DNA from: Octopus sinensis
Taxonomy: Eukaryota
Assembly: GCF_006345805.1 (NCBI RefSeq)
Contig: NC_042999.1
Location: forward strand, 6,386,001-6,450,000
Direction of reading: 5' to 3'
DNA: 64,000 bases
Numbering within the stretch: position 1 is the first letter of the stretch; each line of letters starts with the position of its first letter. Made by a program: the position numbers and the translations under genes. Below, one piece after another: positions 48,201 to 64,000 of the stretch. A model generated the notes under the pieces. The model was not told where the DNA came from, ran no database searches, and was given only the letters and a program-made list of their open reading frames with translations.

Positions 48201-50542
48201 CTTCTTAATGCCAACCACTCCAAGAGTGTAATGGGTGCTCTTACATGCCACTGGCACAGGTGCCAATTATGTGTTACTGGCATCGGTCATGTTGCCTCCA
48301 TCACTACATTGAAGATAGATGTACAACACGTGGGTAGTGTAGGGAATGACTGACCAGTGTGAATAAACATCTTAAATGTGCCATTTGTAATGATGTGTAA
48401 TTTAATTGGCAATGAAAAACAATACCGTTTTTGACTATGTGACAAACATATTTCAATTAACCTAAGTTGTGGTAATACGTAAACACTGCTTAGCTCATTT
48501 ACACCGATAAAGTTATTAAAGTTTAAATATCAAGTTTATTCTTAAGTCATTATTTTATAATTAGGAATATTCTAATTCTCACTAGAATCCCTTCATTGGA
48601 GGAAAATAATATTTAGATTCAGTACAATGTTAGAGAATGAAGAGACAGAGGGAGAAAAATAGTTTGTGAATATTGTGCAGTGGGAAGTAACAGTTTACCT
48701 GATGGGGGAACCTGATGTTGTTACTGAAATGGTTACAGGATTTAAGTTGATATTCAGACACTTTTGATAACAGTTCATGATGGTAGGGATCGTTCACAAG
48801 AACTTTTCCAAAAATTGTCTTCATCCCTTTCATTACCTTAACCACATACCTTAGCGTTTGTAAATGTCTTTTTTCTTTTTATGATAAGCATTTAAGTATT
48901 TTCTCAATCGTTTCATGTCTTTATTTTTCTACGCAGGTGAAAGTAGTGAAAAAGTGCAACGTTTTAAACGATGGTTTTGGTCTGTTGTTGAAAAAATGAA
49001 TAACCATGAGAGACAAGATTTAGTAAGTCCTATTTCTCATCCTTGCAATTTCCAAACAAAACACGTTTATATTTTCAGGATTTCTGTTGTATTATTGGCT
49101 GACAAACTTGATTTAGTTAGAAGGGTTTTTTTGTCATTTTGCAATTTTATCAATTTCCCCTCAGGACATTTTAAACACTTTTGTTACCATATTTATTTAT
49201 TTTGAAATACTCTGTTTCAATTTTTAAAACCTTGAAGAATTTAGTTAAAATATCTTTCTCATTAACCCTTTCGTTACTGTATTTCTGTTGATATTCTCTG
49301 TGTTTCTTTCAATTAATTTTAAATATAACAAATAATTTAGTAAAATAACTTAGTTATCATTAAGCTAGTGTTAGGAATATAAATTGGGACTAAGGTTTGG
49401 TGGAAAATTTTCATTCAAAACTTATAAAAACAAGACATTTGTACTCAGAGCCAGAGCTGGTTTCAGCCAGGTTGGTAACGAAAGGGTTAAGCTTGTTTGG
49501 AATCTAAATTAACCTGAAATTTTGATGGAAGATTTTTTAGACCATTTTAAAACAGGAAATTTGTATCATAGAACCAAGAATGGTGTTGGTATTAAAAAGG
49601 GCCAATTTTTGACAACTATTTTGTTGGTCAAAATATTTAGTTATATTTTAGAGTTTAGTTTTCATTGTCTGTGTCTTTTCACTTAAATGGATGACAGGAA
49701 ATAACTATTAATAATAATAGTTCATCAATACATATGCAGAGATAACTGTTCATTGAAAATTCTTTTTCTTGCAAAACAAAACAGGCTGGGCAAGAGTGCA
49801 AGAGCATTTGGCTGTAGAAATATTGCCATAAATACTTGTCCAAGCCATGCCAGCATGGGTTGGACGATTTTGATTGAGGGCTGGCGAACCAGATGGCTGC
49901 ACCAGGCTCCAGTCTTGATCTGGTAGAGTTTCTACAGCTGGATGCCCTTCCTAACGCCAACCACTCCGAGAGTGTAATGGGTGCTTTTACCTGCCACCAG
50001 CAAGATAGATGAACAAAACCGTTCTGTTGTTAAATTAAATTTCATGTTTCACTTTGTTTTCCAAAAAACTTTAAATTACAGAAATTCTTAGTTTGCTTCA
50101 CTAAATGAAATTCCGTTGCCAAAATCTTAACCAGTTTTGTTCCATGTGCTTTACTCAGTTATTGGTTCCTGCAAAACCTTTAATGAAGAGGGTCATTGCT
50201 GCTCAATAATTGTTGTCTGTCGGTTGAAAGATTCAGATAAATGATGCTTTGTTTTTGGTGTTTTTGTAGTTGTAAATTTTATTTTCGACCTGACTAAAAG
50301 AGGATTTTCTTGTGAAATCTTGTCTTCAGGTGTATTTTTGGACCTCAAGCCCAGCTTTGCCAGCAAGTGAAGAAGGTTTCCAACCAATGCCCAGTATTAC
50401 TATCCGACCAGCAGATGATGACCATTTACCTACAGCCAACACCTGTATTTCACGGCTTTACATCCCATTGTATTCTACAAAAGCCATTCTTCGCAGCAAA
50501 GTGTTATTGGCCATTAAAACAAAAGCTTTCGGTTTTGTTTGA
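701..50542 (+). CDS. UBR5: E3 ubiquitin-protein ligase UBR5 (EDD/hyd), 5'-partial gene model, 33 coding exons in window
   Basis: Spliced translation follows the UBR5 sequence as I recall it ([15 protein letters not shown], UBR box, [16 protein letters not shown] ending [11 protein letters not shown]...KTKAFGFV*); all introns GT-AG with consistent phases. Confidence 0.97.
1458..2281. mobile_element. Tandem pair of piggyBac-like MITEs (TTAA-CCCTTT...AAAGGG-TTAA)
   Basis: TTAA at 1458/2038 and 2058/2278; spacer tgtcaccatgatattt. Confidence 0.7.
1598..1933. mobile_element. Penelope-like inverted terminal element with hammerhead-like core, nested in a piggyBac-like MITE
   Basis: Inverted arms; CTGATGA-a-GGCTG..CAGCT-GAAATGTT at 1844-1879; interrupts the TTAA element 1458..2041. 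Confidence 0.6.
2534..2725 (+). CDS. UBR5: UBR5 exon 2: [34 protein letters not shown]...
   Basis: ttctag/gtaacc, phase 0 to 0. Confidence 0.95.
4412..4496 (+). CDS. UBR5: UBR5 exon 3: [28 protein letters not shown]
   Basis: ttgtag/gtaagt, phase 0 to 1. Confidence 0.9.
5767..5904 (+). CDS. UBR5: UBR5 exon 4: ...[27 protein letters not shown]
   Basis: tttcag/gtaatc; conserved RCDGxRNILH motif. Confidence 0.93.
6070..7106. mobile_element. Non-autonomous hAT (Charlie-like) element carrying nested retroposon and CR1 fragment
   Basis: TIR cagtggttcccaa / ttgggaaccactg; 8-bp flanks ctctagat / gcctagat (6 of 8 match). Confidence 0.7.
6510..7025 (-). mobile_element. CR1-clade LINE 3' fragment (second 3' UTR piece at ~13815-13950)
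   Basis: ORF 6655..6990 has TRGH...[21 protein letters not shown], a CR1 ORF2 C-terminal motif. Confidence 0.85.
7403..7517 (+). CDS. UBR5: UBR5 exon 5: ...[27 protein letters not shown]
   Basis: ttgcag/gtacgt, phase 1 to 2. Confidence 0.85.
7660..8090 (+). mobile_element. Tandem copies of a third SINE family (others ~10060-10270, 18690-18880 -, 19510-19720, 46290-46490, 58410-58620, 59080-59300 -)
   Basis: ggcagaat..gttcaaattctgcc..gactttgcctttcatcc..ataagtaccag, (ATT)n tail. Confidence 0.7.
8102..8660. repeat. Unclassified ~560-bp insertion flanked by (ATT)n on both sides
   Basis: Higher GC than the flanks and bounded by ATT runs; family not recognised. Confidence 0.35.
8841..8983 (+). 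CDS. UBR5: UBR5 exon 6: [11 protein letters not shown]...[10 protein letters not shown]
   Basis: ttaaag/gtaaga; LREMMRR motif. Confidence 0.92.
10285..10735. mobile_element. Tandem pair of piggyBac-like MITEs
   Basis: Same internal sequence and spacer ggtcaccatgatatt. Confidence 0.7.
10864..11065 (+). CDS. UBR5: UBR5 exon 7: ...[30 protein letters not shown]
   Basis: ctgcag/gtaagt, phase 1 to 2. Confidence 0.93.
12745..12982 (+). CDS. UBR5: UBR5 exon 8: [17 protein letters not shown]...[19 protein letters not shown] (UBR box start)
   Basis: ttttag/gtaaat; invariant [13 protein letters not shown]. Confidence 0.96.
14801..14892 (+). CDS. UBR5: UBR5 exon 9: [30 protein letters not shown] (UBR-box zinc finger)
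   Basis: tttcag/gtaagt; Cys/His pattern of UBR box. Confidence 0.97.
15812..15958 (+). CDS. UBR5: UBR5 exon 10: [24 protein letters not shown]...
   Basis: tttcag/gtaaat; AYCDCW motif. Confidence 0.96.
16180..16301 (+). CDS. UBR5: UBR5 exon 11: [28 protein letters not shown]...
   Basis: ttgcag/gttagt, phase 2 to 1. Confidence 0.93.
16419..16548 (+). CDS. UBR5: UBR5 exon 12: [26 protein letters not shown]...
   Basis: ggtgtag (weak) / gtaatt; HDLEPPRF motif. Confidence 0.9.
18106..18211 (+). CDS. UBR5: UBR5 exon 13: [31 protein letters not shown]
   Basis: ttgcag/gtaagt, phase 2 to 0. Confidence 0.94.
18964..19386. repeat. ~420-bp fold-back (about 200-nt arms, 20-nt loop) in UBR5 intron 13
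   Basis: Arms include retroposon tail plus ~100 nt of non-repeat flank on both sides. Confidence 0.9.
19778..19944 (+). CDS. UBR5: UBR5 exon 14: [12 protein letters not shown]...[18 protein letters not shown]
   Basis: gtacag/gtaaca; RFLRSVAR motif. Confidence 0.94.
21418..21754. mobile_element. Second copy of the same inverted element, with a tRNA-like segment between the arms
   Basis: Arms gacacctgatgaaggctg / ccagccttcatctggtgtc; minus-strand gtagtggttaagagc...gttcgattcc (A/B-box-like). Confidence 0.6.
21790..21970 (+). CDS. UBR5: UBR5 exon 15: ...[10 protein letters not shown]...[13 protein letters not shown]
   Basis: ctgtag/gtgcgt, phase 2 to 0. Confidence 0.95.
23076..23249 (+). CDS. 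UBR5: UBR5 exon 16: [17 protein letters not shown]...ISGDVEE
   Basis: ttgtag/gtaaag, phase 0 to 0. Confidence 0.93.
24239..24359 (+). CDS. UBR5: UBR5 exon 17: [19 protein letters not shown]...
   Basis: ttgtag/gtaggc; acidic linker. Confidence 0.88.
24782..25300 (-). pseudogene. Tc1/mariner-superfamily transposase remnant (frameshifted)
   Basis: [12 protein letters not shown]...[13 protein letters not shown], then a shifted frame with ...MVEKDTN...EAMVEAKGG. Confidence 0.8.
25302..25640 (+). mobile_element. Young tRNA-derived SINE of a second family (related copies ~5165-5500 -, 13588-13790, 28170-28490, 29465-29780)
   Basis: ggaggcgcaatggcccagtggttag...ggtttcgattccc head. Confidence 0.75.
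25838..25972 (+). CDS. UBR5: UBR5 exon 18: [27 protein letters not shown]...[10 protein letters not shown]
   Basis: tggcag/gttaga. Confidence 0.94.
26927..27193 (+). CDS. UBR5: UBR5 exon 19: [12 protein letters not shown]...[12 protein letters not shown]...
   Basis: tttcag/gtatag; MQWA motif. Confidence 0.93.
28512..28571. repeat. (TG)n(TA)n compound microsatellite (others 2930, 3685, 4200, 29335-29457, 35955, 39178, 40310, 62745)
   Basis: Direct reading. Confidence 0.95.
28584..29336. mobile_element. Tc1/mariner-derived fold-back element made of two transposon 3' ends
   Basis: ~170-bp inverted ends cagtgtcacaaaaagtcactgatggg / cccatcagtgacttttgggacaccctg; [24 protein letters not shown] on + (~29075-29150) and degenerate equivalent on - (~28900-28960). 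Confidence 0.8.
29968..30215 (+). CDS. UBR5: UBR5 exon 20: [14 protein letters not shown]...[15 protein letters not shown]...
   Basis: atgcag/gtaatt, phase 1 to 0. Confidence 0.94.
30271..30739. mobile_element. Tandem pair of piggyBac-like MITEs
   Basis: Same internal sequence and spacer agtctccatgatattt. Confidence 0.7.
31183..31417 (+). CDS. UBR5: UBR5 exon 21: [31 protein letters not shown]...
   Basis: tgttag/gtatag; MDSTEAQLR motif. Confidence 0.95.
32919..34404 (+). CDS. UBR5: UBR5 exon 22 (1486 nt): [21 protein letters not shown]...HPFFQRSDS...REDLFG followed by long S/T/P/Q-rich low-complexity region
   Basis: tttcag/gttagg; contained in ORF 32906..34471; phase 1 to 2 matches next exon. 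Confidence 0.94.
35455..35620 (+). pseudogene. Restriction-like endonuclease remnant of an R2/NeSL/CRE-type non-LTR retrotransposon
   Basis: [34 protein letters not shown] resembles the H-N-x-PD...E(I/V)xCP REL motif. Confidence 0.65.
36123..36222. other. Assembly gap (100 N, probably unsized)
   Basis: Run of N between two different repeats; UBR5 exons 22 and 23 join in frame across it. Confidence 0.99.
36420..36970 (+). mobile_element. Abundant (GAT)n-tailed retroposon with ~60-bp internal tandem array (>30 copies in window on both strands, e.g. 1-190, 11330-11630, 14985-15250, 19995-20515, 22150-22520, 43540-44180, 56085-56460)
   Basis: Shared core gagtggttggcgttaggaagggcatccagctgtagaaa and tail catggaaagcggacgttaaacgatgatgat. 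Confidence 0.85.
38115..38331 (+). CDS. UBR5: UBR5 exon 23: [29 protein letters not shown]...RDLSLE
   Basis: ttttag/gtaaaa; LLGRWRL motif. Confidence 0.96.
38690..39120 (-). pseudogene. Degraded RTE 3' remnant (similar pieces ~31545-31930, ~46590-46790 on -, ~4790-5030 and ~14230-14640 on +)
   Basis: [14 protein letters not shown]...WWYRHVL motif; shared ends among copies. Confidence 0.6.
39266..39445 (+). CDS. UBR5: UBR5 exon 24: [12 protein letters not shown]...[22 protein letters not shown]
   Basis: ttgcag/gtgagc; HECT N-terminal motif [15 protein letters not shown]. Confidence 0.96.
41441..41513 (+). CDS. UBR5: UBR5 exon 25: [24 protein letters not shown]
   Basis: tcttag/gtaagt; EKLPxLE motif; phase 0 to 1. 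Confidence 0.9.
41634..41905. repeat. Long inverted repeat (MITE-like) filling over half of UBR5 intron 25
   Basis: atattctgttgtgtctgggagagtcatttt...aaaatgactctccccagacacaacagaatat; apex caatagt-tttg-actattg. Confidence 0.85.
42009..42475 (+). CDS. UBR5: UBR5 exon 26: [13 protein letters not shown]... poly-Gly/Ser tract ...[16 protein letters not shown] (MLLE start)
   Basis: ttccag/gtaagg, phase 1 to 0. Confidence 0.94.
42566..42879. mobile_element. Second TTAA/CCCTTTAG MITE family (related copies ~18432-18654, ~55964)
   Basis: ttaaccctttagcatt...ctaaagggttaa termini. Confidence 0.6.
43283..43413 (+). CDS. UBR5: UBR5 exon 27: [39 protein letters not shown] (MLLE/PABC)
   Basis: ttccag/gtaagt; KITGMLLE signature. 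Confidence 0.97.
44325..44552 (+). CDS. UBR5: UBR5 exon 28: [11 protein letters not shown]...[17 protein letters not shown]...RLNAFRNVG
   Basis: tcagcag tandem acceptor / gtatgt. Confidence 0.94.
44684..44912 (+). CDS. UBR5: UBR5 exon 29: [22 protein letters not shown]...[13 protein letters not shown]
   Basis: tttcag/gtaaaa; HECT N-lobe. Confidence 0.96.
45117..45417. mobile_element. hAT MITE inserted in a SINE
   Basis: TIR cagtggttcccaa / ttgggaaccactg with perfect 8-bp TSD atgtaatc. Confidence 0.85.
45547..45672 (+). CDS. UBR5: UBR5 exon 30: [33 protein letters not shown]
   Basis: tttcag/gtatgg. Confidence 0.95.
47012..47370 (+). mobile_element. tRNA-derived SINE family (copies ~3150-3500, 3520-3920, 12060-12410, 35700-36122 -, 39615-40000 -, 45780-46140)
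   Basis: A-box tggctgtgtggtaag, B-box ggttcagtc(c/t)c; CORE-like ggca(c/t)cttgggcaagtg; internal (TA)n. Confidence 0.8.
47709..47853 (+). CDS. UBR5: UBR5 exon 31: [29 protein letters not shown]...TSFNDES
   Basis: ttgcag/gtaagg. Confidence 0.96.
48937..49022 (+). CDS. UBR5: UBR5 exon 32: [28 protein letters not shown]
   Basis: acgcag/gtaagt. Confidence 0.96.
49262..49490. mobile_element. piggyBac-like MITE monomer, reverse orientation (another copy at ~59707-59997)
   Basis: ttaaccctttcgttac...gtaacgaaagggttaa. Confidence 0.7.
50330..50542 (+). CDS. UBR5: UBR5 last coding exon: [21 protein letters not shown]...[12 protein letters not shown]...KTKAFGFV* (catalytic Cys codon 50444-50446)
   Basis: cttcag acceptor; HECT C-lobe; TGA at 50540-50542. 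Confidence 0.97.
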
Positions 50543-52650
50543 GCTGATGGCATTTTTTCATTGAACAATTTTCTGTTGTTTTATTTTTTTTTTTTTAAAT
50601 TCCAAACTTGGCAACTGATTACCAGAACCAGCTGGCTGTGACTAACCATGGAACTTAAAACCAAAAAAAAGGACAAATGTATTGGTGATCATCGTGTTTA
50701 ATTACTGGCTACATTGGATGCCTTGGACTTCAATAAAAGCTTTGTTTTAGCTAAAAAAAAAAAAAGGTGGGGTACACAAACACAAACCTATCAGCCTTTC
50801 TAAATATATATTAAAAAAAAAAACCAAAACAATTAAAAAAAAAATGGTACATTACATTAGTGGAAGCCATTTGTAAATGTCCCATCTCCCATTTTCTAAG
50901 ATGGATTTCATCTGATATTGATGACCAAAATAAATAAAAAATAAGAAACTATTTGCTGTCTCAACTGTCATCTCGGTGGATTTAGGGAATAAAAAAGTGA
51001 AGAAAAACTTTTGAAGGAAGTTAAAAAAAAAATAAAAAGTTCAGCCTTTTTGTTTCTTTTTCAGTTAGAAGAAAAAAAAATGAATTCCTTCATATTGACA
51101 GCCTTGATTTCCTCTAGAATCTATTCTTAAATATTTCATTCTATCAAGAATGATGTATTTATGTTTTCGGGGTCCAAAGAAGAAAAAAAAAATTTATTTT
51201 AGTATTTTAATAATCATCACTTGCAAATAACTTGCTTGAGGTGTTGCCTGTTTGGCCTTTAGCTTATTAATGGATTGGTTGTGCTTTGTTAATTTTCCCC
51301 AGTGTTAAATTGTAATTTGTATATAAAAAAATCTCCTTCCTACAAGAGAAAACGGATGGCTTTACCAAAATTCCAACAAGTGTGAATTGGAAGTGAATAT
51401 CTTCCTTTAAAACATACTTTCTTGGTATCTGATAACTTCTCCCAATTTTTCTATATTCTAATTATTACTGCTTTATTTTAATGTGTGTGTAATATATACA
51501 CACACATATGTTATGTGTAAGGACATGTATGATAATTAATGGGACAAAAAAAAAAAACCAGACATGGGTTTGCCTATTTCATCAAATTTTTTATCATTCA
51601 GTTATGATTTTGGTGCTGGAAAATGTTGGTATCATTTGCCAGGGTCTCCAAACAACAAAACCCAGTCTTAGGACAGGGACTAAAGATGGTGGGGAGTTGG
51701 TTTGAGACAAACAAAGAGGCTAGCATAAAGGGGGAATTAAATTTTTGAAGAAATACAAGCTGAACATAGAGAAATATTTGTATGTGGTCTGTGGAGGAGT
51801 GGATGGCATGAAAGGAAGAAGATATAAGATAGAGCAAGTGAAACAAATACATGACAATAAAAATAGAAGTATGTAAGGGTAAGAACCAACTCCTTAAATG
51901 ACTGACAATGTAAAGGAGAAAAATTGGACCTGGATACAAACCCCAGTTTCTTAGCTAAATTTTTAACTTGGGTTATTCAATGGTTTTTGACACGGCAAAA
52001 ATTTGGTATTGCCCATCTGGAAAGTGCCAGGGTGTATATATGGATATACACACAGACATTTGAAAGACTAGTTTAAATCTTGGCAAAAAAAAAAATTTTG
52101 TAAACTGTGAAGCATTATTTCTTTACATTTGATTAATAATGTACCACAAAGTTTGCCTCTCTTTTATAAATACTTCAACTAATGAATATCTTGTAATTTC
52201 TTTTATGATCCAAAGTTAGTTTTTACTGGAAATCCAAAATCCTCTCAGATTCCTCCTATAGCTTTGTTCCCTCCCACTCTTAAACCTGCCAAGGGAGTTG
52301 GTAGAAATGGACAGGACCCATGTATAAAACCAAAAAGTATTTACACTGATGATAAATCTGAAAAAAAGGGCTTAAAACGATGACAAAGTTTCATAAATTA
52401 ATTTTAATTTTCAGGCCAGTGCTGCACTGAATGCAGTTTTGACTTTGACACATAATTTATATTTGAGAAAAATTTGAAAAGTATTTTTTGTAGGAGAGTA
52501 TTGTAGTTCGCTTGAAGCATTGTGTATTGTTTGTAAAAAATAAAAAGTTTTGAATGGTACAAAACAATGGCCTATATATCTGTTGTAATTTAGTCATCCA
52601 TTTAGTCTGATAATATTTCGGAATAAAATTCCTTCTTCAGATATTCTTAG
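50543..52650 (+). other. Putative UBR5 3' UTR (~2.1 kb maximum)
   Basis: A/U-rich, free of the SINEs found in the introns; AATAAA at 50732, 50933, 50988, 52539, 52622; true end not determinable from DNA. Confidence 0.55.
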
Positions 52651-52788
52651 ATGGAGTCACTGCTATGATCGGTTTTCCAAGCAGTGATTCTAAGAATATC
52701 TGAAGGAATTTTATTCCGAAATATTATCAGACTATATGGATGACTAAATTACAACAGGTATACAGCCAATTGTTTTGTACCATTCAAA
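52549..52788. terminator. Intergenic palindrome (~110-nt arms, 15-nt loop) with AATAAA on + (52622-52627) and on - (52710-52715): candidate bidirectional poly(A) element
   Basis: Arms aligned by eye, roughly 90% complementary; lies between the convergent UBR5 and PDCD2L 3' ends. Confidence 0.6.
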
Positions 52789-52815
52789 GCTTCTTAGTAT
52801 TTTTTTTTTTTGGTG

Positions 52816-52934
52816 TTACATAGATTGTTCGTCTTGTACAAAACATTCTTCTTCTCTCCATTTGTCCTTCTGGTCGTCCCAACAACTCAGTGAACAACTG
52901 TAGCAAATGACGGTTCCAAACTCTACAGCACAAT
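52816..52934 (-). CDS. PDCD2L: PDCD2L last exon: CAVEFGTVICYSCSLSCWDDQKDKWREEECFVQDEQSM*
   Basis: tttcag acceptor; TAA at 52818-52816. Confidence 0.93.
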
Positions 52935-55900
52935 CTGAAAGATACGAAATGCATTCAGTTCTATGCTCCATGGTGAAACAAGTGGCTAAGTAATGCCAGG
53001 TTTTAAGATTGTGGCAACTCTAACTTACCATTGCTACCAAGAAGATTGAGGTCTTTGACAAGAGCTGGCATCAACTGGAATTCAAACTGTCGGTCGGCTC
53101 CACAATAACTACAGCAGCCTGGATCAGGAGCGTTCTTTGTTAATGTGACTGGTTTCCCACCAAGCTCATACCTGTTCAACATTACGAAAGATGGAATACA
53201 TATGTAAACTCCTCTATATATATATATAAATTAGAGAAAAACCACTATTATGTAATTCAAACAATGATAGACAAATCAAAGAAAAAACATTTATCTAGAT
53301 CACAAAAAGTACAAAAATGAATAAACAATATATAAATAAGTAAAAAGACTACGTATGTTTCATGGCTATAATTTCAATTCGAATTACAATTAAATTTAAT
53401 TGAAAAACAATTCAATTTAAAAGTATAGTCCTCAGGTCAACAATAATTGTTAAATAAATAATCAAATAGAATTAAACAATATTTATTAAAGAAATAAAAT
53501 CATTAATTATTATATATATACACACACACATACAGTGTAAAACTATTATGTCATATGATGCAATTAAGATATAGGTTTACCTTACACACTGTTCTGGCCA
53601 TTTTGATAGAATTTTATAAAATTTGTAGACAGATTTATCTCCATGTTGCACGTTGGTCTTTTCATAGGTTTCTGTACATCCACCGGAAGTTTTCCCCACC
53701 CTGTGGAAACAAAGACTTGAATTACTGCTTTGTTAAGCTGATAGATGAAATCATGTGTGTATGCACACAGACAGAGACACACGTTTACACAGGTGCAAAA
53801 TCTGGTGGAGAAAATAGTTCTCAAATTCCAAAGGTAGACTTAAAATATGGTATTTCTGTTGAAGCTGAGGGAACTTCAAGAATGGTTACTCAGAATTTCC
53901 TCTAACCATTTGTCAAATGGTTGTGAGTATTCAGAACACAAGTCTGAGCAGTTACGTGAAACTGAGTAAGTTTCTGAATTTTTTTTCCAGCTTGAGTAAA
54001 ATTATGTCTTTATATATATAAAGCTGAAGTTGTCTGTGTGTGGCAGGTTTGGTAGCCTTCAACTAACACTATCTCCTCCGAAACCCTGTGGCGCAAGTTG
54101 ACCAAAATTGAGAGTATGATAGAAGAAGGCTTGCTCTTCCTTCCGTAGAAGAAAAAATTCAAATCGGACCATGTTAACACCAAAAATTATTTACATCAAA
54201 GAGGTGCTTTTTTTTCTATGAAAATCCCTATTTTTTACGATTTTTTTACTGCTGGGTCGCCATTTTTCTGTGTATTTCAACCAAAAAAAGGTTCACTTAA
54301 AGAGAATAACAAGCTACATAATGCAAAATTTTTGCTTTTCAAAAATTCCAATTCTAAAGGGTTGAAAAGAATACAAACCCGAGCAATGCCGGGCTATACT
54401 GCTAGTTTATAGATAAGACCCAGCAACTAAAATGAGATTGCAGCCATGCATGTCCGGCCCTGTTAAGAATACCCCTGATGCACTGGGTGATACGATATGC
54501 TTGCGAAGACCTTTTGAGTCTAGTAAAACCAATATCGTAGCTGTGGCCAGTGCCCCCTGACTGGCTCCCATTCCGGTGGCATGCAAATAGCACCATCCGA
54601 ACATGGCTGATGCCAGTAACCCCCGACTGGCCCCTGTGCCGGTGGCATGTAAAAGCACTATCTAAATGTGATCAATACTAGGCCCAACTGACTGGCTCCT
54701 GTGCCAGGGGCTCGTAAAAAGCACCCACTACACTCTAAAGAGTGGTTAGCATTAGGAAGGGCATCCAGCTGTAGAAACATTGCCAGATCAGATTGGAGCC
54801 TGGAGCAGTCGCTGGCTCTCCAGACCTCAGTCAAACCATCCAACCCATGCCAGCATGGAAAATGGATGTTAAACAATCATGATATAAAAAAAAAAAAAAA
54901 GGTCACAGAACCATCACAAGGTGTTCTAAACTCACTGAGCAGCACTGATCATTTCTTCGTAAGCTTTTCCTTCTTTTTCTTTATAGTTTTCCAGAAGCTG
55001 TTGGATGTGCTCAGAGTGACTGGCTTCTTCTGATTCTTCGTATACATTTAAATAATAAGGCTTGAGGCACGGTTCATCTTTGTAATTTAGTTGATGGTTT
55101 TGGTGGGAAGTTGAGCTCGTTTGTGGGAAGCAACTTTATTAAGAAAAAGAAAAAATATATATACATATATAAATAAATAGTATGATCTTAATTTCAGAAG
55201 AGGGAGAAATTTATTTTATCAACTAAGAAAAACATTTTTCTGTAACAAAAACAATTCAATTCACATGCCAGTACCATGTACTCACTAAAGTGGTGGGCAT
55301 TAGGAAGGGCATGCAGGTGAAGAAACCATTCCAAAATTGACAATGGAACCAGGTGCTGCTCTTGGGGATTGGCAGCTCCTTTCAAACTGTCCAACCCATG
55401 CCAGCATGGAAAGTAGATGTTAAAGACAATCAAGATTTATAATTTCTTTTTTTTAATTGATATTAAAGCTAATGAAATCGTGTGAGAATAAAGAGTTTCA
55501 TGTTTTCAAAAATTCCAATTCTAAAGGGTTGAAAAGAATACAAACCCGAGCAATGCCGGGCTATACTGCTAGTTTATAGATAAGACCCAGCAACTAAAAT
55601 GAGATTGCAGCCACGCATGTCCGGCCCTGTTAAGAATACCCCAGATGCATTGGGCAATACGATATGCTTTCTTGGCTTCATTTAAGCACACAGTTGGGAA
55701 ATGGAGGCTACACAAGTTAGAAATGTCAGTTATGGCTAAATATCTCAAGTCACTGGATTACAGCCATGTTGGGTTTTAACTTTAATCTGGTTCTTATCTT
55801 ATCAAATCTTGAAAGAACAAAAAGTCACATTTAGTGTAAAGGAAGACAACTTAACTCCAGCTGAATGACAAAAAAATGTGTTAATCTCTCTCTTACACAC

Positions 55901-58900
55901 ACAAAACATAATCTCCACCTGTTTCTGTCAGACTGTGACACAGCTTCTATGTTCTAAACTTCGTTAACCCTTTAGCATTTAAACTGGCCACATCCGGTCC
56001 AAATTTTCTCCTTCTTTTATGTTCAAACCATCCAGATCAGGCCTCTCACTCATATCCTACAATGACATCCTCAAAATAAACCATCATCATTTAGTGTCCG
56101 CTTTCCATGCTAGCATGGGTTGGACGGTTCAACTGGGGTCTGTGAAGCCAGAAGGCTGCATCAGGCCCAGTCTGATCCGGCAGTGTTTCTACAGCTGGAC
56201 ATCCTTCATAACACCAACCACTCCGCGAGTGTGGTGGGTGCTTTTTACGTGCCACCGACACAGGTGCCAGACGGAGCTGGCAAACGGCCACGAACGGATG
56301 GAGCTTTTACGTGCCACCGGCACGGGGGCCAGGCGAAGCTGGCAACGGACACGAGCGGATGGTGCTTTTTACATGCCACCGGCACGAGGCCAGTCGGGGC
56401 GGCGCTGGCAACGGTCACGAACAGATGGTTCTCTTACGTGCCACCGGCACTGGTAACTCAGCTGCAATTTCCATTGATCGATTTCGATTCTGATCCTCAC
56501 ATCATCAAATTCTCAGAATTACAAGATAATGCAGGATTAATTCAAAACAATGTGAATAAACAAGCATTATATTTGACAGAGTAATCTGAACACTGTGACT
56601 TTCATGACCTGCTCCAACAATTTGATGCCTCTGGGGTTGCTTCTATCTAAGGCATCTCCTCCCTGTCATTGGTTATGACCTCTTCCTGCACAACCTGGGC
56701 CATATCATACTCTGCCACATATTTTAAGCATCTTAGCAGTAATTCCCAATGGATCAGGGAATTTCCTTGTCTTCAGTTGATGGGGTTTCACAGAGTTTTC
56801 GTCAACTTAATTTCATTGACAAGGCTTGCGGCTGGCACGGCAGAATTGTGAAGTGAACTTCTGAATCATTTGGCCATTCTGTTCACTAGAATACCTGTCC
56901 CGGTGACACGTAAAAAGCACCAACCGATCGTGGCCGCTGCCAGCCTCCCCTGGCACCTGTGCTGGTGGCACGTAAAAAGCACCCACTACACTCACAGAGT
57001 GGTTGGTGTTAGGAAGGACATCCAGCTGTAGAAACTCTGCCAGATCAGACTGGAGCCTGGTGTAGCCTCCTGGCTTCCCAGACCTCGGTTGAACCGTCCA
57101 ACCCATGCCAGCATGGAAAGCGGACGATGATGGTGATGATGAAACTCAACATGGCCAATGCCATATTCTTTTATGAACTCTGTGTTGAGACAAAAGAAAA
57201 ATAAACTTTACAGGAAATAAAGGTACTGCTGGCACATACAAAACCCAGGTGAGGGTGTCATGTAAAAGAGCATCCAGTACACACCGTAAAGTGGTTGGCA
57301 TTAGGATAAAGAAAATTAAAGGAAGTCTAAGATATATTGGTCTCAATTTTGGCACAATTTCAGGGAGTGGGCAAGTAGAATTACATCAACCCCAGTGCAC
57401 AGCTGGTATTTATTTCATTGACCCTGAAAGGATGGAAAGTAAAGTTGACTTTGGTGGAGTTTGAACTCAGAATGTAAAGACAGATGAAGTGCTAATGATC
57501 CTGCTAACAGGCTAAAGTATATTAACAAAGATCAATAATTACTTCCTTCCACATACCAATCTATACATATAAAGCTGAAGTTGCCTGCGTATGGCAGGTT
57601 TGGTAGCCTTCAACTAACACTATCTCCTCTGAGACCCTGCGGCGCAAGTTGACCAAATTTGAGAGTATGATAGAAGAAGGCTTGCTCTTCCTTCCGTAGA
57701 AGAAAAAATTCAAATCGGACCATGTTAACACCAAAAATTATTTACATCAAAAAGGTGCTTTTTTTCTATGAAAATTCCTATTTTTTACTGCTGTGTCGCC
57801 ATTTTCAGTGTATTTCAACCAGAAAAATGTTCACTTAAAAAGAATAACAAGCTACATAATGCAAAATACTTTTACTTTTCAAAAATTCCAATTCTAAAGG
57901 GTCAAAACAAACTAGTGTATGATGAACAGAATTTCTTGATCTGCCATGAGAAGAGAAGACATTCCTCAATGATATAAAATCTGTTCAAATTTTGGTGAGG
58001 AAATGAAAGAACTACAATCAGGAATGAAACTTCAGTTGTTGACTCAGCCTCCATAGAAGCTTGCTTGACACTTCAGCCATGCCACTCACCACTAACTAGA
58101 CTACAAGAAAGTGAGAAAGTGTTTTTTATATATGTGTGTGTGTGTATAATGGAAGGATTTGAAAAACTTTGATCCATTAAGTTTAACTAAATAATTAATT
58201 AATTAAACAGTTCCCTCTGGAGGTGAGGGAGAGAATAACTTTTAAAACTGTAAGCAAGGGAGATAACTACAATACCATCTGTTTCCATTAAGACAATTTC
58301 GAGACACTGGAAGGAGAAGATTTGGTCCTTAAAGGATTCTAATCTATAGTCCATTATATTATTATTATTATTTTATTGTTGTTACATTATCTGTTATATA
58401 AATCTGGATTGAAGGCAGCAAGCTAGCAGAATCATCGTTAGCATGATGGCTTAGTAGCATTTCGTCCGTCTTTTACATTCTGAGCTCAAATTCCTCCAAC
58501 GTTGACTTTGCCCTTCATCTTTTTGGAGTTGATAAAATAAGAACCAGTTGAGCACTGGGATGGAGAGGGGGGGGGGGGTAATCGACAAAGCCCCTCCCTC
58601 GAAATTGCTGGCCTTGTGCTAAAACTTGAGGCACCTGTGCCGGTGGCATATGTAAAAAGATTTGAGCGAGGTCATTGCCAGTACTGCCGGACTGGCCCCC
58701 GTGCCAGTGGCACGTAAAAAGCACCCACTACACTCTCAGAGTGGTTGGCGTTAGGAAGGGCATCCAGCTGTAGAAACTCTGCCAGATCAAGATTGGTTCA
58801 CCAGTCCTTAGTCAAAAGCGTCCAACCCATGCTAGCATGAAAAGCGGACGTTAAACAATGATGATGATGAAATTAGCTGGATTAAAGTCCTGTTTTATCA

Positions 58901-61731
58901 ACAATACATGTGAAATGAATAATTGCAGAAACTGCCAGGGTTGTTTTATTGGGCAGAGTGCTTTTCTTGAGTTCCAAGACTGAAAGTGGATGAGAAATAA
59001 ACCATTGCCCTTAGATAGGAGACAAAGGCGATAGGAACTCAGGTTATAAGCATTTCGCCCAGTGTGCTAATGCTTCTTATTTCTTTACTACCCACAAGGG
59101 GCTAAACACAGAGGGGACAAACAAGGACAGACAAAGGGATTAAGTCGATTACATCAACTTCAGTGTGTAACTGGTACTTAATTTATCAACCCAGAAAGGA
59201 TGAAAGGCAAAGTCTACCTTGGCGGAATTTGAACTCAGAACGTAATGACAGACGAAATACCACTAAGCATTTCACCAATCGTGCTAACGTTTCTGCCAGC
59301 TCTCAGCTTTAAGAACTGGAAATGATATCATACCTGTCACTCAAGAAAGACAAATGTAAACTCAAAGATCATCATCATTATTCAATGTCCGTTGCCCATG
59401 CTAGTGTGGGTTGGACGGTTTGACCGGGGCTAGTAAGCTGGAAGGTTGCACCAGACTCCAGTCTGTTTTGGCATGGCTTCTACAGCTGAACATAAATTGT
59501 GACTAAGGTTTGGTGGACAATTTTAATTCAGAACTTATGAAAACAAGACACTTGTACTACAGAGCCAACCACACTGTGAGTGTAACGGGTGCTTTTATGT
59601 GCCACTGGCACGGGTGCCATCTGCTATAACTGCGATTTTACTTGGCTTGATGGCTCTTCCTTCTCAAGCACGATGTGTATAAAAGTAGTTTAAACATGTT
59701 AACTACCATTGCCTGTTACTAGAACTTATCAGTGACACCACATCGTTTTGACCACGCTGCATGCTGTTTAACCCTTTGATTACTGTATTTCTTTTGGGAT
59801 GTTCTGTGTTTCTTTCAATTATTTTAAATATAACAAAGAATTTAGTAAAATAACTTCATTATCATTCAGCTAGTGTTAGGAACATAAATTGTGACTAAGG
59901 TTTGGTGGAAGATTTTAATTCAGAACTTTTGAAAACAAGACATTTGTACTACAGATCCAGAGGCGGTTTCATCTGGGTTGGTATCGAAAGGGTTAATTAC
60001 AAGGAGGCATAATTTTTTTTGCATTTTTACAATATTTCATAATAAAACTTTAATATTTAGCACCCATGTTATTTAAATATCTTTGAAACCATAGACTAAA
60101 ATATTTTCTCAAATTATGGAAACGTACCATTTGGTGGTGCATCTGGCACTTGTGCAAAGTTTGTAATGAACCGCCAGTGGGATATGTGGTAATTAATTTG
60201 TTAATTAGCTATTTACTTACTTGCTCATTTCCTCACACGCTCTGTTTTTAGTCTCTGCATCCTGTTCACCGAGTTTACATTTGTTATCCATCATCTTGCT
60301 GAGATCACTTTCGGCCAAACCATTGCTCGGCTGCTCACACCATTCATCTACCTCTATGTCATCGTCCCAAGTATTATCGTCACAGCCCCAGGAATCAACG
60401 AGTTTAACCTTTTTTTCAGTTACTGAATTGTTGTTGAAGGCATTAGTAGCAGGAGTTGCTTCAGAATTTTGTTCACGAAAAATTTTCCAGCTAAAAATAA
60501 AAAAAAAAACAAAAACAATTACTCATAATTAGAGAATTTCATCAATTGATTTCAAGGCTTGGGTGATGGAAATTGTGATGTTGATGTCTCTCAAAGAGAT
60601 TACAGGAATAACTAAATCATCATCATCATCGTTTAACGTCCACTTTCCCATGCTGGCATGGGTTGGATGGTTTGACTGAGGACCGGCAAGCCAGGAGGCA
60701 GCACCAGGCTCCAATCTGATCTGGCAAGGTTTCTATAACTGGATGCCCTTCCTAATGCCAACCACTCCCATCTACCAAATCCACAACCAAGGTTTTGTTC
60801 AGCTCAAGGTTATAGTAGAAAACACTTGCCCAAGGTATCCAGAGGGGAACTGAACCCAGAACCATGTGGTGGAGAAGCAAGCCTCTTACCACACAGCCAA
60901 GCCTTAGTGTTCATAATCTATTAATATAACAGGATTCATATAACTTTACTTATTTTCTCACAATAAAATCTGTCCAGACCTACCATCATCATAGTTTAAC
61001 GTCCACTTTCCATGCTGGCATGGGTTGGATGGTTTGACCGAGGACTGGCAGGCCAGGAGGCTGCACCAGGTTCCAATCTGATCAGGCAAGGTTTACACAG
61101 CTGGACGCCCTTCCTAACGCCAACTACTCCGGGAGTGTCTTTTACGTGCCACCAGCATGGGAACCAGTCAGGTGGCACTGGCATCGACAATACTCAAATA
61201 GTGCTTTTTATGTGCCACCGGCATGGAAATCAGTCAGGGGGCACTGGCATTGACCACGCTCAAATAGTGCTTTTTACATGCCACTGGCATGGGAACCAGT
61301 CAGGTGGCACTGGCATTGACCATGCTTGAATGGTGCTCTTGGCCATGGCCATGGGAAAGTATTGCCTTGCTTGGAAACAGGCTAAGGTTGGCAACAGCAA
61401 GAATATCTGTCTGGCCATAAAAAATCTACTTCAACAAATTTGGACTGACCCATGCAAACATGAAAAAGTGAACGTTAAATGATGATGATGATGAAAAGGA
61501 GAAGGAGGAAGAGAAGATGGTCTTCAAATGACTAAAAGAACCAAAAAAATGTAGAATTTCAGTGACTTACCATTCACTCTTACCCCAACAAGTTGTGTTG
61601 ATGCAGGAGAACAGATGTAAAGTTCGGTGATAAGACGACTGCATGAGGGGACAATACAACTGGACAATCTGACACATCGACTGCTGACACTGACAACATT
61701 TCGGTACTGCAAGGGGCTCCGTAAACTGATC
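52816..61731 (-). CDS. PDCD2L: Programmed cell death protein 2-like (PDCD2_C domain protein), 5'-partial, 6 exons in window
   Basis: Spliced translation has QLYCPL...YHRTLHLFSC, WKIFR, PYYLNV, YEKT, RYELGG...CSYCGADRQFEFQLMPAL, VEFGTVICYSCSLSCW; no MYND finger, so PDCD2L rather than PDCD2; phases consistent. Confidence 0.9.
53029..53171 (-). CDS. PDCD2L: PDCD2L exon: YELGGKPV...CSYCGADRQFEFQLMPALVKDL
   Basis: gaacag/gtaagt; FEFQLMP signature of PDCD2_C. Confidence 0.93.
53581..53700 (-). CDS. PDCD2L: PDCD2L exon: VGKTSGGCTETYEKTNVQHGDKSVYKFYKILSKWPEQCV
   Basis: ccacag/gtaaac, phase 2 to 2. Confidence 0.9.
54007..54405 (+). mobile_element. Non-autonomous Helitron
   Basis: 5' TC..(TA)n aaagctgaag; 3' hairpin cccgagcaatgccggg then CTAG|T. 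Confidence 0.75.
54936..55133 (-). CDS. PDCD2L: PDCD2L exon: CFPQTSS...DEPCLKPYYLNVYEE...HIQQLLENYKEKEG
   Basis: ataaag/gtgagt, phase 2 to 2; the acceptor was chosen to keep frame. Confidence 0.82.
56600..56770 (-). pseudogene. RTE-type RT fragment
   Basis: GDALDRSNPRGIKLLEQVMKV on minus strand. Confidence 0.6.
57560..57915 (+). mobile_element. Helitron copy lacking the 3' hairpin
   Basis: A|TC start, same body, ends CTAG|T. Confidence 0.7.
60221..60490 (-). CDS. PDCD2L: PDCD2L exon: WKIFREQNS...DSWGCDDNTWDDD...
   Basis: ttttag/gtaagt, phase 2 to 2. Confidence 0.88.
61571..61731 (-). CDS. PDCD2L: PDCD2L exon: DQFTEPLAVPKCCQCQQSMCQIVQLYCPLMQSSYHRTLHLFSCINTTCW
   Basis: ctctag/gtaagt on minus strand, phase 0 to 2. 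Confidence 0.9.
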
Positions 61732-61825
61732 CTAGAGATGAAAGTAAGAAATTGGTGTCATTGTTATCATTTGTAGTATTAGTATTAGGCAGGAAATGTG
61801 CTTAAGACAAAAACTGCTCTTATAA

Positions 61826-62179
61826 TCTCTCTATATATAAAGCTGGAATTGTCTGTGTATGACAGGTTTGGTAGCCTTCAACTAACACTATCTCCTCCGA
61901 GACCCTGCGGCACAAGTTGACCAAAATTGAAAGTATGATAGAATCAGACCATGTTAACACCAAAAATTATTTACATCAAAAAGGTGCTTTTTTTTCTATG
62001 AAAATCCCTATTTTTTACAATTTTTTGACTGCTGTGTCACCATTTTTCGGTGTATTTCAACCAGAAAAATGTTCACTTAAAGAGAATAACAAGCTACATA
62101 ATGCAAAATTTTTACTTTTCAAAAATTCCAATTCTAAAGGGTCGAAACAAACCTGAGCAACGCCGGGCGATACTGCTAG
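61826..62179 (+). mobile_element. Helitron copy with an internal deletion
   Basis: A|TC start; cctgagcaacgccgggcgatactgCTAG|T end. Confidence 0.75.
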
Positions 62180-62744
62180 TTTATACATATTCACCAAACC
62201 TTCATCAAACACACACAAAACATCGTCATTATGAAATTTCTCTCACTCTCTCTCTCTTGCCCGAAATGGTCATGACTGCTGGAACTTGACTGAGGAAAGA
62301 GAGCCACAAATGACCTGTCTGTTTTTGCCTGTCCTAATTGTTGTTTCTCTTGTCCACCTTTGTATCGTCTATCTGTCCGAACATTTTAATGTCCTCTATT
62401 GCGTTTTTGTTCCATTTTTATTTAAAATCACAGAATGTAAAAAAATATATATTTCCTAATAAAATACAAATAGAGCCATTCTATTTGTATTTTATTAGAA
62501 TATATACATTTTTACATTCTGTGATTTTATGTATTATTTTTTTTATGTGTTTGTAGACCATGGCGTTTTTTATATATGATTAAATGTTTGAGTGGTGGTG
62601 TTGTATGTAAAGTCGTTGACCTGAATTTAATGTTTGTTCTATAACCAATGCTTCTTCATTTTCATCTCATATTTGAGTACTTCTTTTGCAGTCCTTTTAT
62701 TTCTATATTACGAGATAAATATTATTTCTTGTTATGTGTGTGTA

Positions 62745-62806
<62 letters not shown>

Positions 62807-63595
62807 GGGAAGATAGTTTTTGTATGTGGCAGATGCTCAGGAGCAATAAACACTGAAAATGCGCAGAGACCAACTTCTGCCACATTCCAGGGAGAAAAAC
62901 TAGAAGTAGTTGATAGTTTCCATTACCTAGGTGATCAAGTCAGTAGCAGGGGTGGATGCTCTGAAAGTGCAGCTGCTAGAATAAGAATAGCTTGGGCAAA
63001 GTTCAGAGAGCTCCTGCCTCTGCTTGTGACAAAGGGCCTCTTGCTCAGAGTAAAAGGTAGACTGTATGACGCATGTGTACGAACAGCTATGCTACATGGC
63101 AGTGAAACATGGGCCGTGACTGCTGAGGACATGCATAAGCTTGCAAGGAATGAAGCCAGTATGCTCCGATGGATGTGTAATGTCAGTGTGCATGCTCAAC
63201 AGAGTGTAAGTCCCTTCAGAGAAAAGTTGGACCTAAGAAGCATTAGATGTGGTGTGCAAGAGAGACGACTGCGCTGGTATGGTCATGTGGCAAGAATGGA
63301 TGAGGATAGCTGTGTGAAAAAGTGCCACACCCTAGCAGTTGAGGGAACCTGTGGAAGACGTAGAACCAGGAAGAAGCATCGGATGTGGCGTGCAAGAGAG
63401 ACGTTTGTGCTGGTATGATCATGTACTACGGATGGATGAAGAGATATGTGTGAAGAAGTGCCACTCCCAAACAGTTGAAGGAATCCGGGGTAGAGGTAGA
63501 CCCAGGAAGACATGGGATGAGGTGGTCAAGCATGACCTTCGAACAATGGGCCTCACAGAGACCAAGACATCTGGAGATATGCTGTGACTGCAAAA
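62807..63595 (+). mobile_element. RTE-clade LINE ORF2 3' fragment with internal duplication
   Basis: FHYLGD...ARIRIAWAKFREL...VRTAMLHGSETW...RRLRWYGHVARM...GRGRPRKTW. Confidence 0.85.
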
Positions 63596-63865
63596 GATGA
63601 GGATATTTGTTCTCATCTTGTTTGTTGTTAACACGTTTCGGCTGATGTACCCTCCAGCCTTTTTCAGGTGTCTTGGGGAAATTTCGAACCAGGGTTCTCA
63701 TTCTTAAGGTAGTTTTCGATGTTATTATTATTATTATTCAGGTCACTGCCTGGGATCAAACTCGAAATCTTGGGGTTAGTAGCCTGCACTCTTAACCACT
63801 ATGCCAGATGAGGACAAAAATCTGTCAAATGTAAATAATTCCTCATCTCTTGAATATAGAACTGT
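63596..63865. mobile_element. Third, truncated copy of the same element
   Basis: acgtttcggctgatgtaccctccagcc arm plus tRNA-like segment, similar to 21418..21754. Confidence 0.55.
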
Positions 63866-64000
63866 AGGGTTAATTTGTTTGACTAATATTCTTCAAGGTG
63901 GAACTCCAGCACAGCCACAGTCTAATGACCAAAACAAGTAAAAGAATTCCAGTTACAGAGACTCTGTCTGGGATTTTGAAATCAGTTATTTTATCTAAAT

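What the first reader, a model, noticed from the sequence alone, without database searches (positions are those of the whole stretch)
52549..52788. Palindrome with poly(A) signals on both strands at the junction of convergent UBR5 and PDCD2L
Seen: a ~240-bp inverted repeat (arms 52549-52664 and 52680-52788, ~90% complementary by eye, 15-nt loop) begins only ~27 nt after the PDCD2L stop. It has AATAAA at 52622 on + and at 52715-52710 on -, in mirror positions. Inference: one element may terminate both genes. If each is cleaved shortly after its own hexamer, both mRNAs would end in nearly the same arm sequence, allowing co-regulation. Any read-through instead puts a ~110-bp dsRNA hairpin in the 3' UTR (ADAR/Staufen/Dicer substrate). 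It could be a domesticated MITE acting as a bidirectional terminator and editing switch; no other copy is visible in this window.
Basis: partly seen in the sequence, partly recalled or inferred. Interest (0 to 1): 0.8.

Follow-up and report, generated by a model that had tools for sequence, protein, structure and literature searches.

The report
Hairpin palindrome after the PDCD2L stop
A real DNA palindrome of about 250 bp lies between two tail-to-tail mollusc genes and has a poly(A) signal on each strand only because it is a palindrome; it is most likely a transposon-type insertion in the PDCD2L 3' UTR, and nothing available shows it ends both genes.

Summary
The arms are 52543-52664 and 52680-52794, with a 15-nt loop. 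Of 115 aligned positions, 108 are complementary. Predicted RNA hairpins are about -160 kcal/mol on either strand (z = -24).

AATAAA is present at 52622 (+) and 52715-52710 (-). The mirror placement follows automatically from the palindrome and is not an extra coincidence.

- **PDCD2L side:** the stop is at 52818-52816, and no canonical signal precedes the one in the arm. Every PDCD2L mRNA must therefore enter the palindrome. It either ends after one arm or carries the whole hairpin to the next signal, ATTAAA at 52408.
- **UBR5 side:** the stop is 2 kb upstream, with nine canonical hexamers before the palindrome. One of them (51031) has a strong T-rich downstream element.

Large palindromes are common here: six of at least 250 bp in 64 kb, three of them belonging to one multi-copy family. 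Arm mismatches show no strand bias.

No transcripts, genome copies or orthologues could be reached, so MITE membership, shared termination, editing and small RNAs remain untested.

Best reading: an ordinary MITE- or foldback-like insertion in a 3' UTR that may supply PDCD2L's proximal poly(A) signal. Interest is low to moderate.

The parts
52543..52664 (.). Left arm of the palindrome (122 nt)
   Evidence: Gapped alignment to the reverse complement of the right arm: 108/115 aligned positions identical; the repeat finder I1 and I3
52665..52679 (.). 15-nt loop (ATGATCGGTTTTCCA on +). It is U-rich on the + RNA and A-rich on the - RNA.
52680..52794 (.). Right arm of the palindrome (115 nt). It is the first arm transcribed by PDCD2L.
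52622..52627 (+). AATAAA in the left arm, 2080 nt after the UBR5 stop. It has 3 UGUA within 100 nt upstream and a moderate U-rich stretch downstream.
52710..52715 (-). AATAAA in the right arm. It is the first canonical poly(A) hexamer after the PDCD2L stop (101 nt), with 2 UGUA upstream and CA at +13 and +29.
52541..52542 (.). TA next to the left end; a possible 2-bp target-site duplication (weak evidence)
   Evidence: Read; the systematic search found no longer duplication with good terminal repeats
52795..52796 (.). TA next to the right end; a possible 2-bp target-site duplication (weak evidence)
52816..52934 (-). Last coding exon of the PDCD2_C-domain gene (PDCD2L-like), with stop TAA at 52818-52816
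   Evidence: ORF and splice acceptor read; Pfam PDCD2_C E = 3.8e-19, covering the profile to its end
53029..53171 (-). Penultimate coding exon of the PDCD2L-like gene
50330..50542 (+). Last coding exon of UBR5 (ends ...KTKAFGFV, stop 50540-50542)
   Evidence: over 143 aa, 94% identity to the Dreissena HECT protein and matches to JGI 'EDD1' proteins
51031..51036 (+). AATAAA 489 nt after the UBR5 stop, with CA at +11 and a 75% T downstream stretch. It is the best-looking UBR5 poly(A) site, upstream of the palindrome.
52403..52408 (-). ATTAAA 408 nt after the PDCD2L stop, with a U-rich downstream stretch. It is the likely site used if the signal in the arm is skipped, and possibly the site used before the insertion.
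52800..52811 (-). A12 run on the PDCD2L strand, 4 nt after the stop. It is not a poly(A) site but could cause oligo-dT internal priming.

Best explanation
The element is a non-coding, AT-rich (31% GC) palindromic insertion of about 252 bp, of the MITE or foldback type. It lies 21 nt downstream of the stop codon of a PDCD2L-like gene, in the 2.3-kb spacer between that gene and the convergent UBR5.

**Shown**
- The palindrome and its strong predicted hairpin.
- The gene ends.
- The arm hexamer is the first canonical poly(A) signal available to PDCD2L.

**Inferred**
- The element inserted at a TA in an A/T-rich site between the PDCD2L stop and an older poly(A) site. That site is ATTAAA at 52408, which would lie about 155 nt after the stop without the insert.
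- Because each arm carries UGUA...AAUAAA...CA, the first arm transcribed now offers PDCD2L a proximal site, giving a 3' UTR of about 120-135 nt with one arm and no hairpin.
- Transcripts that pass it fold the whole hairpin of about 110 bp. This hides the hexamer, and they end at 52408 or beyond.
- Those isoforms would be ordinary substrates for dsRNA-binding proteins (ADAR, Staufen, Dicer).
- UBR5 most likely ends upstream, for example at 51031. At most a minor long isoform reaches the palindrome.
- The two-strand symmetry of the signals is a by-product of the palindrome, not an adaptation.
For: - **Structure:** palindrome and fold statistics.
- **PDCD2L signals:** first canonical minus-strand hexamer at 52715, next at 52408.
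- **Gene ends:**
- **Palindromes are common here:** six of at least 250 bp in 64 kb. One palindromic family has three copies in the window, at 1597-1934, 21413-21759 and 63601-63839. Elements of this form therefore do multiply in this genome, and about a 20% chance exists of finding one in a 2.3-kb spacer.
- **No sign of selection on an RNA stem:** of the 7 arm substitutions, 2 give G:U on the + RNA, 2 give G:U on the - RNA and 3 pair on neither. The two indels lie next to the loop.
- **Insertion site:** TA dinucleotides flank both ends, in an A-run/T-run target. Tc1-mariner is the largest TIR class and MITE families are annotated in Octopus vulgaris (PMC13282606).
- **UBR5 alternatives:** 9 canonical hexamers lie upstream, including one with a 75% T downstream element.
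- **Hairpin effect:** occlusion of AAUAAA inhibits polyadenylation (PMC2645353).
Against: - No second copy was found in the window, in JGI metagenome contigs (only chance 19-23 nt matches) or in viral contigs. The host genome itself could not be searched, so the defining multi-copy property of a MITE is untested.
- The TA duplication is only 2 bp in AT-rich DNA. Complementarity runs on into the A/T runs, so the ends are ambiguous.
- No transcript data exist for either gene.
- The junction 50009-54006 is the longest stretch in the window free of interspersed repeats. This suggests constraint and leaves room for a long UBR5 3' UTR that reaches the element.
Confidence: 0.55

Rival explanations
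1. Shared bidirectional poly(A)/termination module. UBR5 is cleaved after the left-arm AATAAA and PDCD2L after the right-arm AATAAA. Both mRNAs then end in the same sequence of about 100 nt, and the arrangement is maintained by selection. Read-through gives an edited or diced hairpin that acts as a switch.
For: - Facing AATAAA hexamers lie 88 nt apart, each with UGUA upstream and CA downstream.
- PDCD2L has no earlier canonical signal.
- The spacer is unusually free of interspersed repeats, as expected if it is mostly 3' UTR.
- Palindromic bidirectional poly(A) elements at convergent genes are documented in C. elegans and zebrafish (PMC3460199).
Against: - The mirror signals follow automatically from the palindrome, with about a 1 in 4 chance per arm at this composition.
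- UBR5 has 9 earlier canonical hexamers, one with a much better downstream element.
- The hairpin would sequester both hexamers once the second arm is transcribed, and such occlusion inhibits polyadenylation (PMC2645353).
- Arm mismatches show no compensatory or strand-biased pattern.
- Palindromes of this size are common in the window.
- No conservation or expression data are available.
Confidence: 0.1
2. Local inverted duplication rather than a mobile element. A segment of about 120 bp of the original PDCD2L 3' UTR was copied in inverted orientation, by template switching or hairpin-mediated repair. This made a single-locus palindrome that later gained changes near its centre.
For: - No other copy was found anywhere that could be searched.
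- No target-site duplication longer than TA.
- Complementarity fades gradually into the flanking A/T runs.
- Both indels lie near the loop. Central changes are known to stabilise palindromes (my own knowledge, not checked here).
Against: - The host genome was not searchable, so absence of copies is uninformative.
- The window shows that palindromic elements of similar size are multi-copy in this genome.
- The TA...TA flanks fit a Tc1/mariner-type insertion.
Confidence: 0.2
3. An independent hairpin-RNA gene: a precursor of microRNA or endogenous siRNA that happens to lie between the genes.
For: - A very stable, nearly perfect hairpin on both strands.
- Weak Rfam matches to long-hairpin plant MIR families, the best being MIR2606 at 57 bits, E = 1e-7.
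Against: - All Rfam matches are far below the gathering scores (57 against 140, 46 against 140, 44 against 211, 41 against 71). They are to unrelated plant families, so they reflect generic hairpin shape only.
- A stem of 110 bp is far longer than animal pre-miRNAs (my own knowledge).
- The element lies 21 nt after a stop codon and is therefore part of an mRNA.
- No small-RNA data are available.
Confidence: 0.05
4. Assembly or amplification artefact: a chimeric inverted read collapsed into the assembly.
For: The window comes from a scaffolded draft with a 100-N gap at 36123-36222.
Against: - The arms differ by 7 substitutions and two indels.
- The element is small, internal, and flanked by different unique gene sequence on each side.
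- Five other large palindromes, some in multi-copy families, show that this is a property of the genome.
Confidence: 0.03

Closest known systems
MITEs, especially Tc1/mariner-derived (Stowaway-like) and foldback-type elements that lie in 3' UTRs and donate poly(A) signals
   Same: Short (about 250 bp), non-coding and AT-rich, with inverted ends that let the whole element fold back. It lies next to a gene, TA is present at both ends, and it carries a usable AATAAA. MITE and Tc1-mariner families are annotated in Octopus vulgaris (PMC13282606).
   Different: No second copy has been seen and the target-site duplication is not convincing, so family membership is unproven. The ends do not resemble the classic Stowaway or mariner terminal motifs that I know of (own knowledge, not tested).
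Palindromic bidirectional poly(A) elements of convergent genes (C. elegans, Jan et al. 2011, as cited in PMC3460199; zebrafish, PMC3460199)
   Same: Convergent genes with facing AAUAAA signals in a palindromic arrangement and little intergenic space.
   Different: - The known cases are short sites where cleavage positions on the two strands fall within 10-50 nt and no long stem is involved.
- Here the hexamers lie inside a hairpin of about 110 bp that would mask them.
- One gene's stop is 2 kb away, with many earlier signals.
- No cleavage sites have been mapped.
Inverted-repeat Alu pairs and other repeat-derived dsRNA in 3' UTRs (ADAR hyper-editing, Staufen binding, nuclear retention)
   Same: If PDCD2L reads through, its 3' UTR holds a long, nearly perfect intramolecular duplex. 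This is the main kind of A-to-I editing target across Metazoa (PMC5625713).
   Different: It is a single self-complementary element with a 15-nt loop, not two separate repeat copies. Long near-perfect dsRNA in UTRs is selected against in mammals (PMC7006430). Editing has not been observed here.
HIV-1 poly(A) hairpin
   Same: AAUAAA lies inside a stem, and stem stability lowers use of the site (PMC2645353). This gives a mechanism for a choice between proximal cleavage and read-through.
   Different: The viral stem is short and tuned. This stem is about 110 bp and about -160 kcal/mol, so once it forms it should block the site rather than modulate it.
Hairpin-RNA (hpRNA) loci producing endogenous siRNAs, and MITE-derived plant microRNA genes
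   Same: A long, near-perfect inverted repeat transcribed as one RNA. Rfam's only matches are to such plant MIR families.
   Different: All scores are well below the family thresholds. The element lies inside an mRNA 3' end, and there are no small-RNA data.

Membership tests
MITE | Terminal inverted repeats | tested here: met
   The whole element is self-complementary; the outer 26 nt match at 24 of 26 positions
MITE | Short (under about 800 bp) and without coding capacity | tested here: met
   252 bp; no ORF of 35 aa or more lies within it, and the only such ORFs touching it run in from the flanks
MITE | Target-site duplication of a length typical of a superfamily | tested here: inconclusive
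   Only TA...TA (52541-42 and 52795-96). No direct repeat of 3 bp or more pairs with good terminal repeats. TA is weak evidence in 31% GC DNA.
MITE | Many dispersed copies in the host genome | not testable with these tools
   No copy in the window. Metagenome and viral scans gave only chance matches or none. No collection reachable here holds this organism or a close relative.
Palindromic bidirectional poly(A) element (Jan et al. 2011; PMC3460199) | Convergent genes with poly(A) signals facing each other on opposite strands | tested here: met
   UBR5 on +, PDCD2L-like on -; AATAAA at 52622 (+) and 52715 (-)
Palindromic bidirectional poly(A) element (Jan et al. 2011; PMC3460199) | Mapped cleavage sites of the two transcripts within about 50 nt of each other | not testable with these tools
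   No transcript or 3'-end data could be reached
microRNA / hairpin-RNA gene | Match to a curated family at its gathering score | tested here: not met
   Best Rfam match is MIR2606 at 57.2 bits against a gathering score of 139.7; all five matches are below threshold
microRNA / hairpin-RNA gene | Discrete small RNAs from the arms | not testable with these tools
   No small-RNA data
Repeat-derived dsRNA editing substrate in a 3' UTR | Long intramolecular duplex within a transcribed UTR | tested here: inconclusive
   The duplex is predicted with z = -24. Whether both arms occur in one mature mRNA depends on which poly(A) site is used, and that is unknown.
Repeat-derived dsRNA editing substrate in a 3' UTR | Clustered A-to-G mismatches in RNA reads | not testable with these tools
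   No RNA reads
PDCD2L (as opposed to PDCD2) | PDCD2_C domain present and no MYND zinc finger | tested here: inconclusive
   PDCD2_C is met. A regular-expression scan of the minus strand 52816-64000 found no MYND-like cysteine pattern, but Pfam did not score the candidate upstream exons, and the exons were not fully assembled.

The most novel reading that the evidence does not exclude
The palindrome is a selected, transposon-derived two-way 3'-end module. It gives PDCD2L its main poly(A) site and gives a long UBR5 isoform its distal site, so both mRNAs share a 3'-terminal sequence of about 100 nt. Kinetic competition between CPSF binding and hairpin closure decides between clean cleavage and read-through RNAs that carry an editable or diceable 110-bp duplex.
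Probability: 0.06. Interest if true: 0.6.

Novelty: new member of a known kind. Interest (0 to 1): 0.22.

Why it matters
If the ordinary reading is right, this is one more case of a palindromic repeat landing in a 3' UTR and offering a ready-made poly(A) signal. That is useful for annotating the PDCD2L 3' end, and it warns that the A12 run and the hairpin can mislead 3'-end mapping, but it is not surprising.

It would matter more if both genes really used the element. A long hairpin holding facing poly(A) signals would then be a structured variant of the short bidirectional poly(A) palindromes known from worms and fish. It would also be a tractable case of RNA folding competing with 3'-end processing in an animal lineage with heavy RNA editing. 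That requires transcript data, which could not be reached here.

Tried and rejected
- **Same-species transcripts or orthologous loci through the protein collections:**
  - The PDCD2L C-terminus (86 aa) found nothing.
  - The UBR5 C-terminus (143 aa) and the last-exon ORF (76 aa) found only distant animals.
  - The best contigs from Logan and ENA share 75-78% nucleotide identity in the exon and nothing outside it. They show no PDCD2L in the 0.7-1.5 kb downstream.
  - Members of the 90% clusters were listed, and the 14 whose sequences I fetched include none identical to the window ORF.
  - The Dreissena protein could not be located on a contig.
- **Copy number:**
  - Two metagenome scans gave nothing for a 23-mer and 20 loci for a 19-mer. 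All 20 were chance matches of 19-23 nt with no extension.
  - One viral scan gave nothing.
  - Sensitive BLAST in the window found only the two arms.
- **Rfam:** only sub-threshold matches of generic hairpin shape. There are no tRNA genes in the window.
- **Target-site duplication:** nothing longer than TA.
- **Strand bias of G:U-compatible mismatches:** none, 2 against 2, so there is no hint of which RNA strand, if either, is under structural selection.
- **Pfam on other window ORFs:** candidate upstream PDCD2L exons, the large UBR5 exon and two transposon-like ORFs gave no hits.
- **Assembly artefact:** considered and rejected, because the arms differ and the flanks are unique.
- **Bacterial-style intrinsic terminator:** rejected, because the genes are spliced animal genes transcribed by Pol II.

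Full report
**Observation**

The repeat finder gives arms 52535-52635 and 52702-52802 (101 nt, 91% complementary) and an inner perfect 17-nt pair.

A gapped alignment resolves this into one palindrome:
- left arm 52543-52664, loop 52665-52679 (15 nt), right arm 52680-52794;
- 108 of 115 aligned positions complementary;
- 7 substitutions and two indels next to the loop, of 3 nt and 4 nt in all.

As RNA it folds into a single long hairpin on either strand. The energies are -161.2 and -157.5 kcal/mol, against -49 and -44 for shuffles, z about -24.

AATAAA is at 52622-52627 on + and at 52715-52710 on -. A motif in one arm of a palindrome must reappear on the other strand of the other arm, so the 'mirror positions' are not an independent observation. 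Canonical hexamers occur 2.2-2.3 times per kb per strand in this window. An arm of about 120 nt therefore has roughly a 1 in 4 chance of holding one.

**Genes**

- **UBR5 (+ strand).** The last coding exon, 50330-50542, ends ...KTKAFGFV*. Together with the two preceding exons it is 94% identical over 143 aa to a Dreissena HECT protein, and it matches JGI 'EDD1' proteins.
- **PDCD2L-like gene (- strand).** Two exons, 53171-53029 and 52934-52816, give a peptide that matches Pfam PDCD2_C to the end of the profile (E = 3.8e-19). The stop is TAA at 52818-52816.
- **PDCD2L or PDCD2?** No MYND-like cysteine pattern was found upstream on that strand. This fits PDCD2L rather than PDCD2, but the upstream exons were not confirmed.
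- **Organism.** It is a mollusc by the UBR5 similarity. I could not verify that it is a coleoid.

**Which poly(A) signals each gene can use**

PDCD2L strand:
- The stop is followed by CACC, an A12 run, and then the right arm.
- There is no canonical hexamer before the one in the arm, 101 nt after the stop. The next is ATTAAA at 52408, beyond the palindrome.
- So every PDCD2L mRNA must enter the element. This is the firmest functional inference.
- It either ends some 10-30 nt after 52710, with one arm and no hairpin, or it carries the complete hairpin and ends near 52385 or further on.
- Without the 252-bp element, ATTAAA at 52408 would lie about 155 nt after the stop, followed by a U-rich stretch. 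That is what one would expect of the original site before an insertion.

UBR5 strand:
- Nine canonical hexamers lie between the stop and the palindrome.
- The one at 51031 has CA at +11 and a 75% T downstream stretch, the best context of all.
- The sites at 52539 and 52622 have several UGUA upstream but only moderate downstream elements.
- Nothing in the sequence singles out the palindrome as the UBR5 terminator.

**The hairpin and the hexamers**

In the fold, each AAUAAA is paired with the UUUAUU of the other arm. The partner is transcribed only about 88 nt later.

Stabilising a stem that contains AAUAAA inhibits polyadenylation (PMC2645353). A stem of -160 kcal/mol should therefore compete with use of the site rather than help it.

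This gives a plausible switch for PDCD2L between cleavage and read-through. It argues against an efficient two-way terminator. This step is inference.

**How special is the element?**

Not very special for this genome. A reverse-strand self-comparison finds six whole palindromes of at least 250 bp in the 64 kb:
- 20-411
- 1597-1934
- 18961-19389
- 21413-21759
- 41634-41905
- 52535-52802

That is about one per 11 kb, so a 2.3-kb spacer has about a 20% chance of holding one.

- Two of them (20-411 and 18961-19389) are head-to-head copies of an abundant SINE-like repeat.
- 1597-1934, 21413-21759 and a third copy at 63601-63839 belong to one palindromic family. Palindromic elements therefore do multiply here.
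- The element at 41634-41905 (272 bp, 6-nt loop) resembles ours in size and form and is likewise single in the window.

The seven arm substitutions give G:U on the + RNA twice, G:U on the - RNA twice, and pair on neither strand three times. There is no sign that either RNA's stem is being preserved.

**Mobile element or not?**

- The form fits a MITE or foldback element: short, non-coding, 31% GC, fully self-complementary.
- TA flanks both ends inside an A-run/T-run target. Tc1-mariner and MITE families are reported for Octopus vulgaris (PMC13282606).
- The defining property, many copies, could not be tested. There is no copy in the window. JGI metagenome contigs gave only chance matches of 19-23 nt, and viral contigs gave none.
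- No duplication longer than TA exists.
- A local inverted duplication therefore remains a serious rival.

**Relatives and transcripts**

- PDCD2L found nothing.
- UBR5 found only distant animals. The closest last-exon ORFs are 93-96% identical in protein but 75-78% in DNA, with no similarity outside the exon.
- Conservation, empty sites, mRNA ends, editing and small RNAs could therefore not be examined.

The stretch 50009-54006 (3998 bp) is the longest run in the window without any window-internal repeat. It covers the last UBR5 exon, the whole spacer and the last two PDCD2L exons. Overall, 36% of the window is repeat-covered and the mean repeat-free run is under 500 bp.

This suggests the junction is constrained, as long 3' UTRs would be. 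A long UBR5 isoform that reaches the palindrome is therefore not excluded.

**Comparison with known systems**

- The idea of palindromic, bidirectional poly(A) elements at convergent genes is already documented in C. elegans and zebrafish (PMC3460199). Those are short sites with no long stem.
- Repeat-derived duplexes in UTRs are the usual A-to-I targets across animals (PMC5625713).
- Long near-perfect duplexes are selected against in mammals (PMC7006430).
- Rfam gave only sub-threshold matches to plant long-hairpin MIR families.

**Verdict**

- Shared termination, domestication and an editing switch are untested, and on the sequence evidence less likely than a neutral insertion.
- I rate it a new member of a known kind, with low to moderate interest.

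Noticed in passing
window 50009-54006: This is the longest stretch in the window free of window-internal interspersed repeats (3998 bp; overall repeat cover is 36% and the mean repeat-free run is under 500 bp). It spans the last UBR5 exon, the whole convergent spacer and the last two PDCD2L exons, which suggests constraint such as long 3' UTRs.
   Followed up: partly
window 41634-41905: A second palindrome of about 272 bp with a 6-nt loop, about 88% complementary, inside UBR5. It is single-copy in the window and similar in size and form to the one studied, but unrelated in sequence.
   Followed up: partly
window 1597-1934, 21413-21759, 63601-63839: Three copies of one palindromic repeat family. 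The two complete copies are about 340 bp and 72-85% alike; the third, at 63601-63839, is shorter. This shows that palindromic elements multiply in this genome. The centre looks tRNA-like by eye.
   Followed up: partly
window 20-411 and 18961-19389: Large palindromes formed by head-to-head copies of an abundant SINE-like repeat. That repeat has about 35 copies in the window and covers much of the introns.
   Followed up: partly
window 51031-51080: AATAAA followed by CA and a 75% T stretch, 489 nt after the UBR5 stop. It is the best-looking UBR5 poly(A) site by simple context features.
   Followed up: partly
window 52800-52811: An A12 run on the PDCD2L strand, 4 nt after the stop codon. It is likely to cause internal priming in oligo-dT libraries and so false 3' ends.
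   Followed up: no
window 36123-36222: A run of 100 N (scaffold gap), so the window comes from a gapped draft assembly.
   Followed up: yes
window 32906-34471: A very large open exon of UBR5 (521 aa) with long Ser/Thr/Pro/Gln low-complexity tracts and no Pfam match. It appears lineage-specific.
   Followed up: no
window 24747-25301 (-) and 63026-63418 (+): ORFs that look by eye like remnants of a DDE transposase and a reverse transcriptase. Pfam gave no match at E <= 0.01.
   Followed up: partly
L021-L038 (Logan and ENA contigs): The closest public contigs with the UBR5 last exon are only 75-78% identical in DNA, and their introns are far more compact (three exons within 2.4 kb, against 5.8 kb here). 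No close relative of this organism is in the reachable collections.
   Followed up: yes
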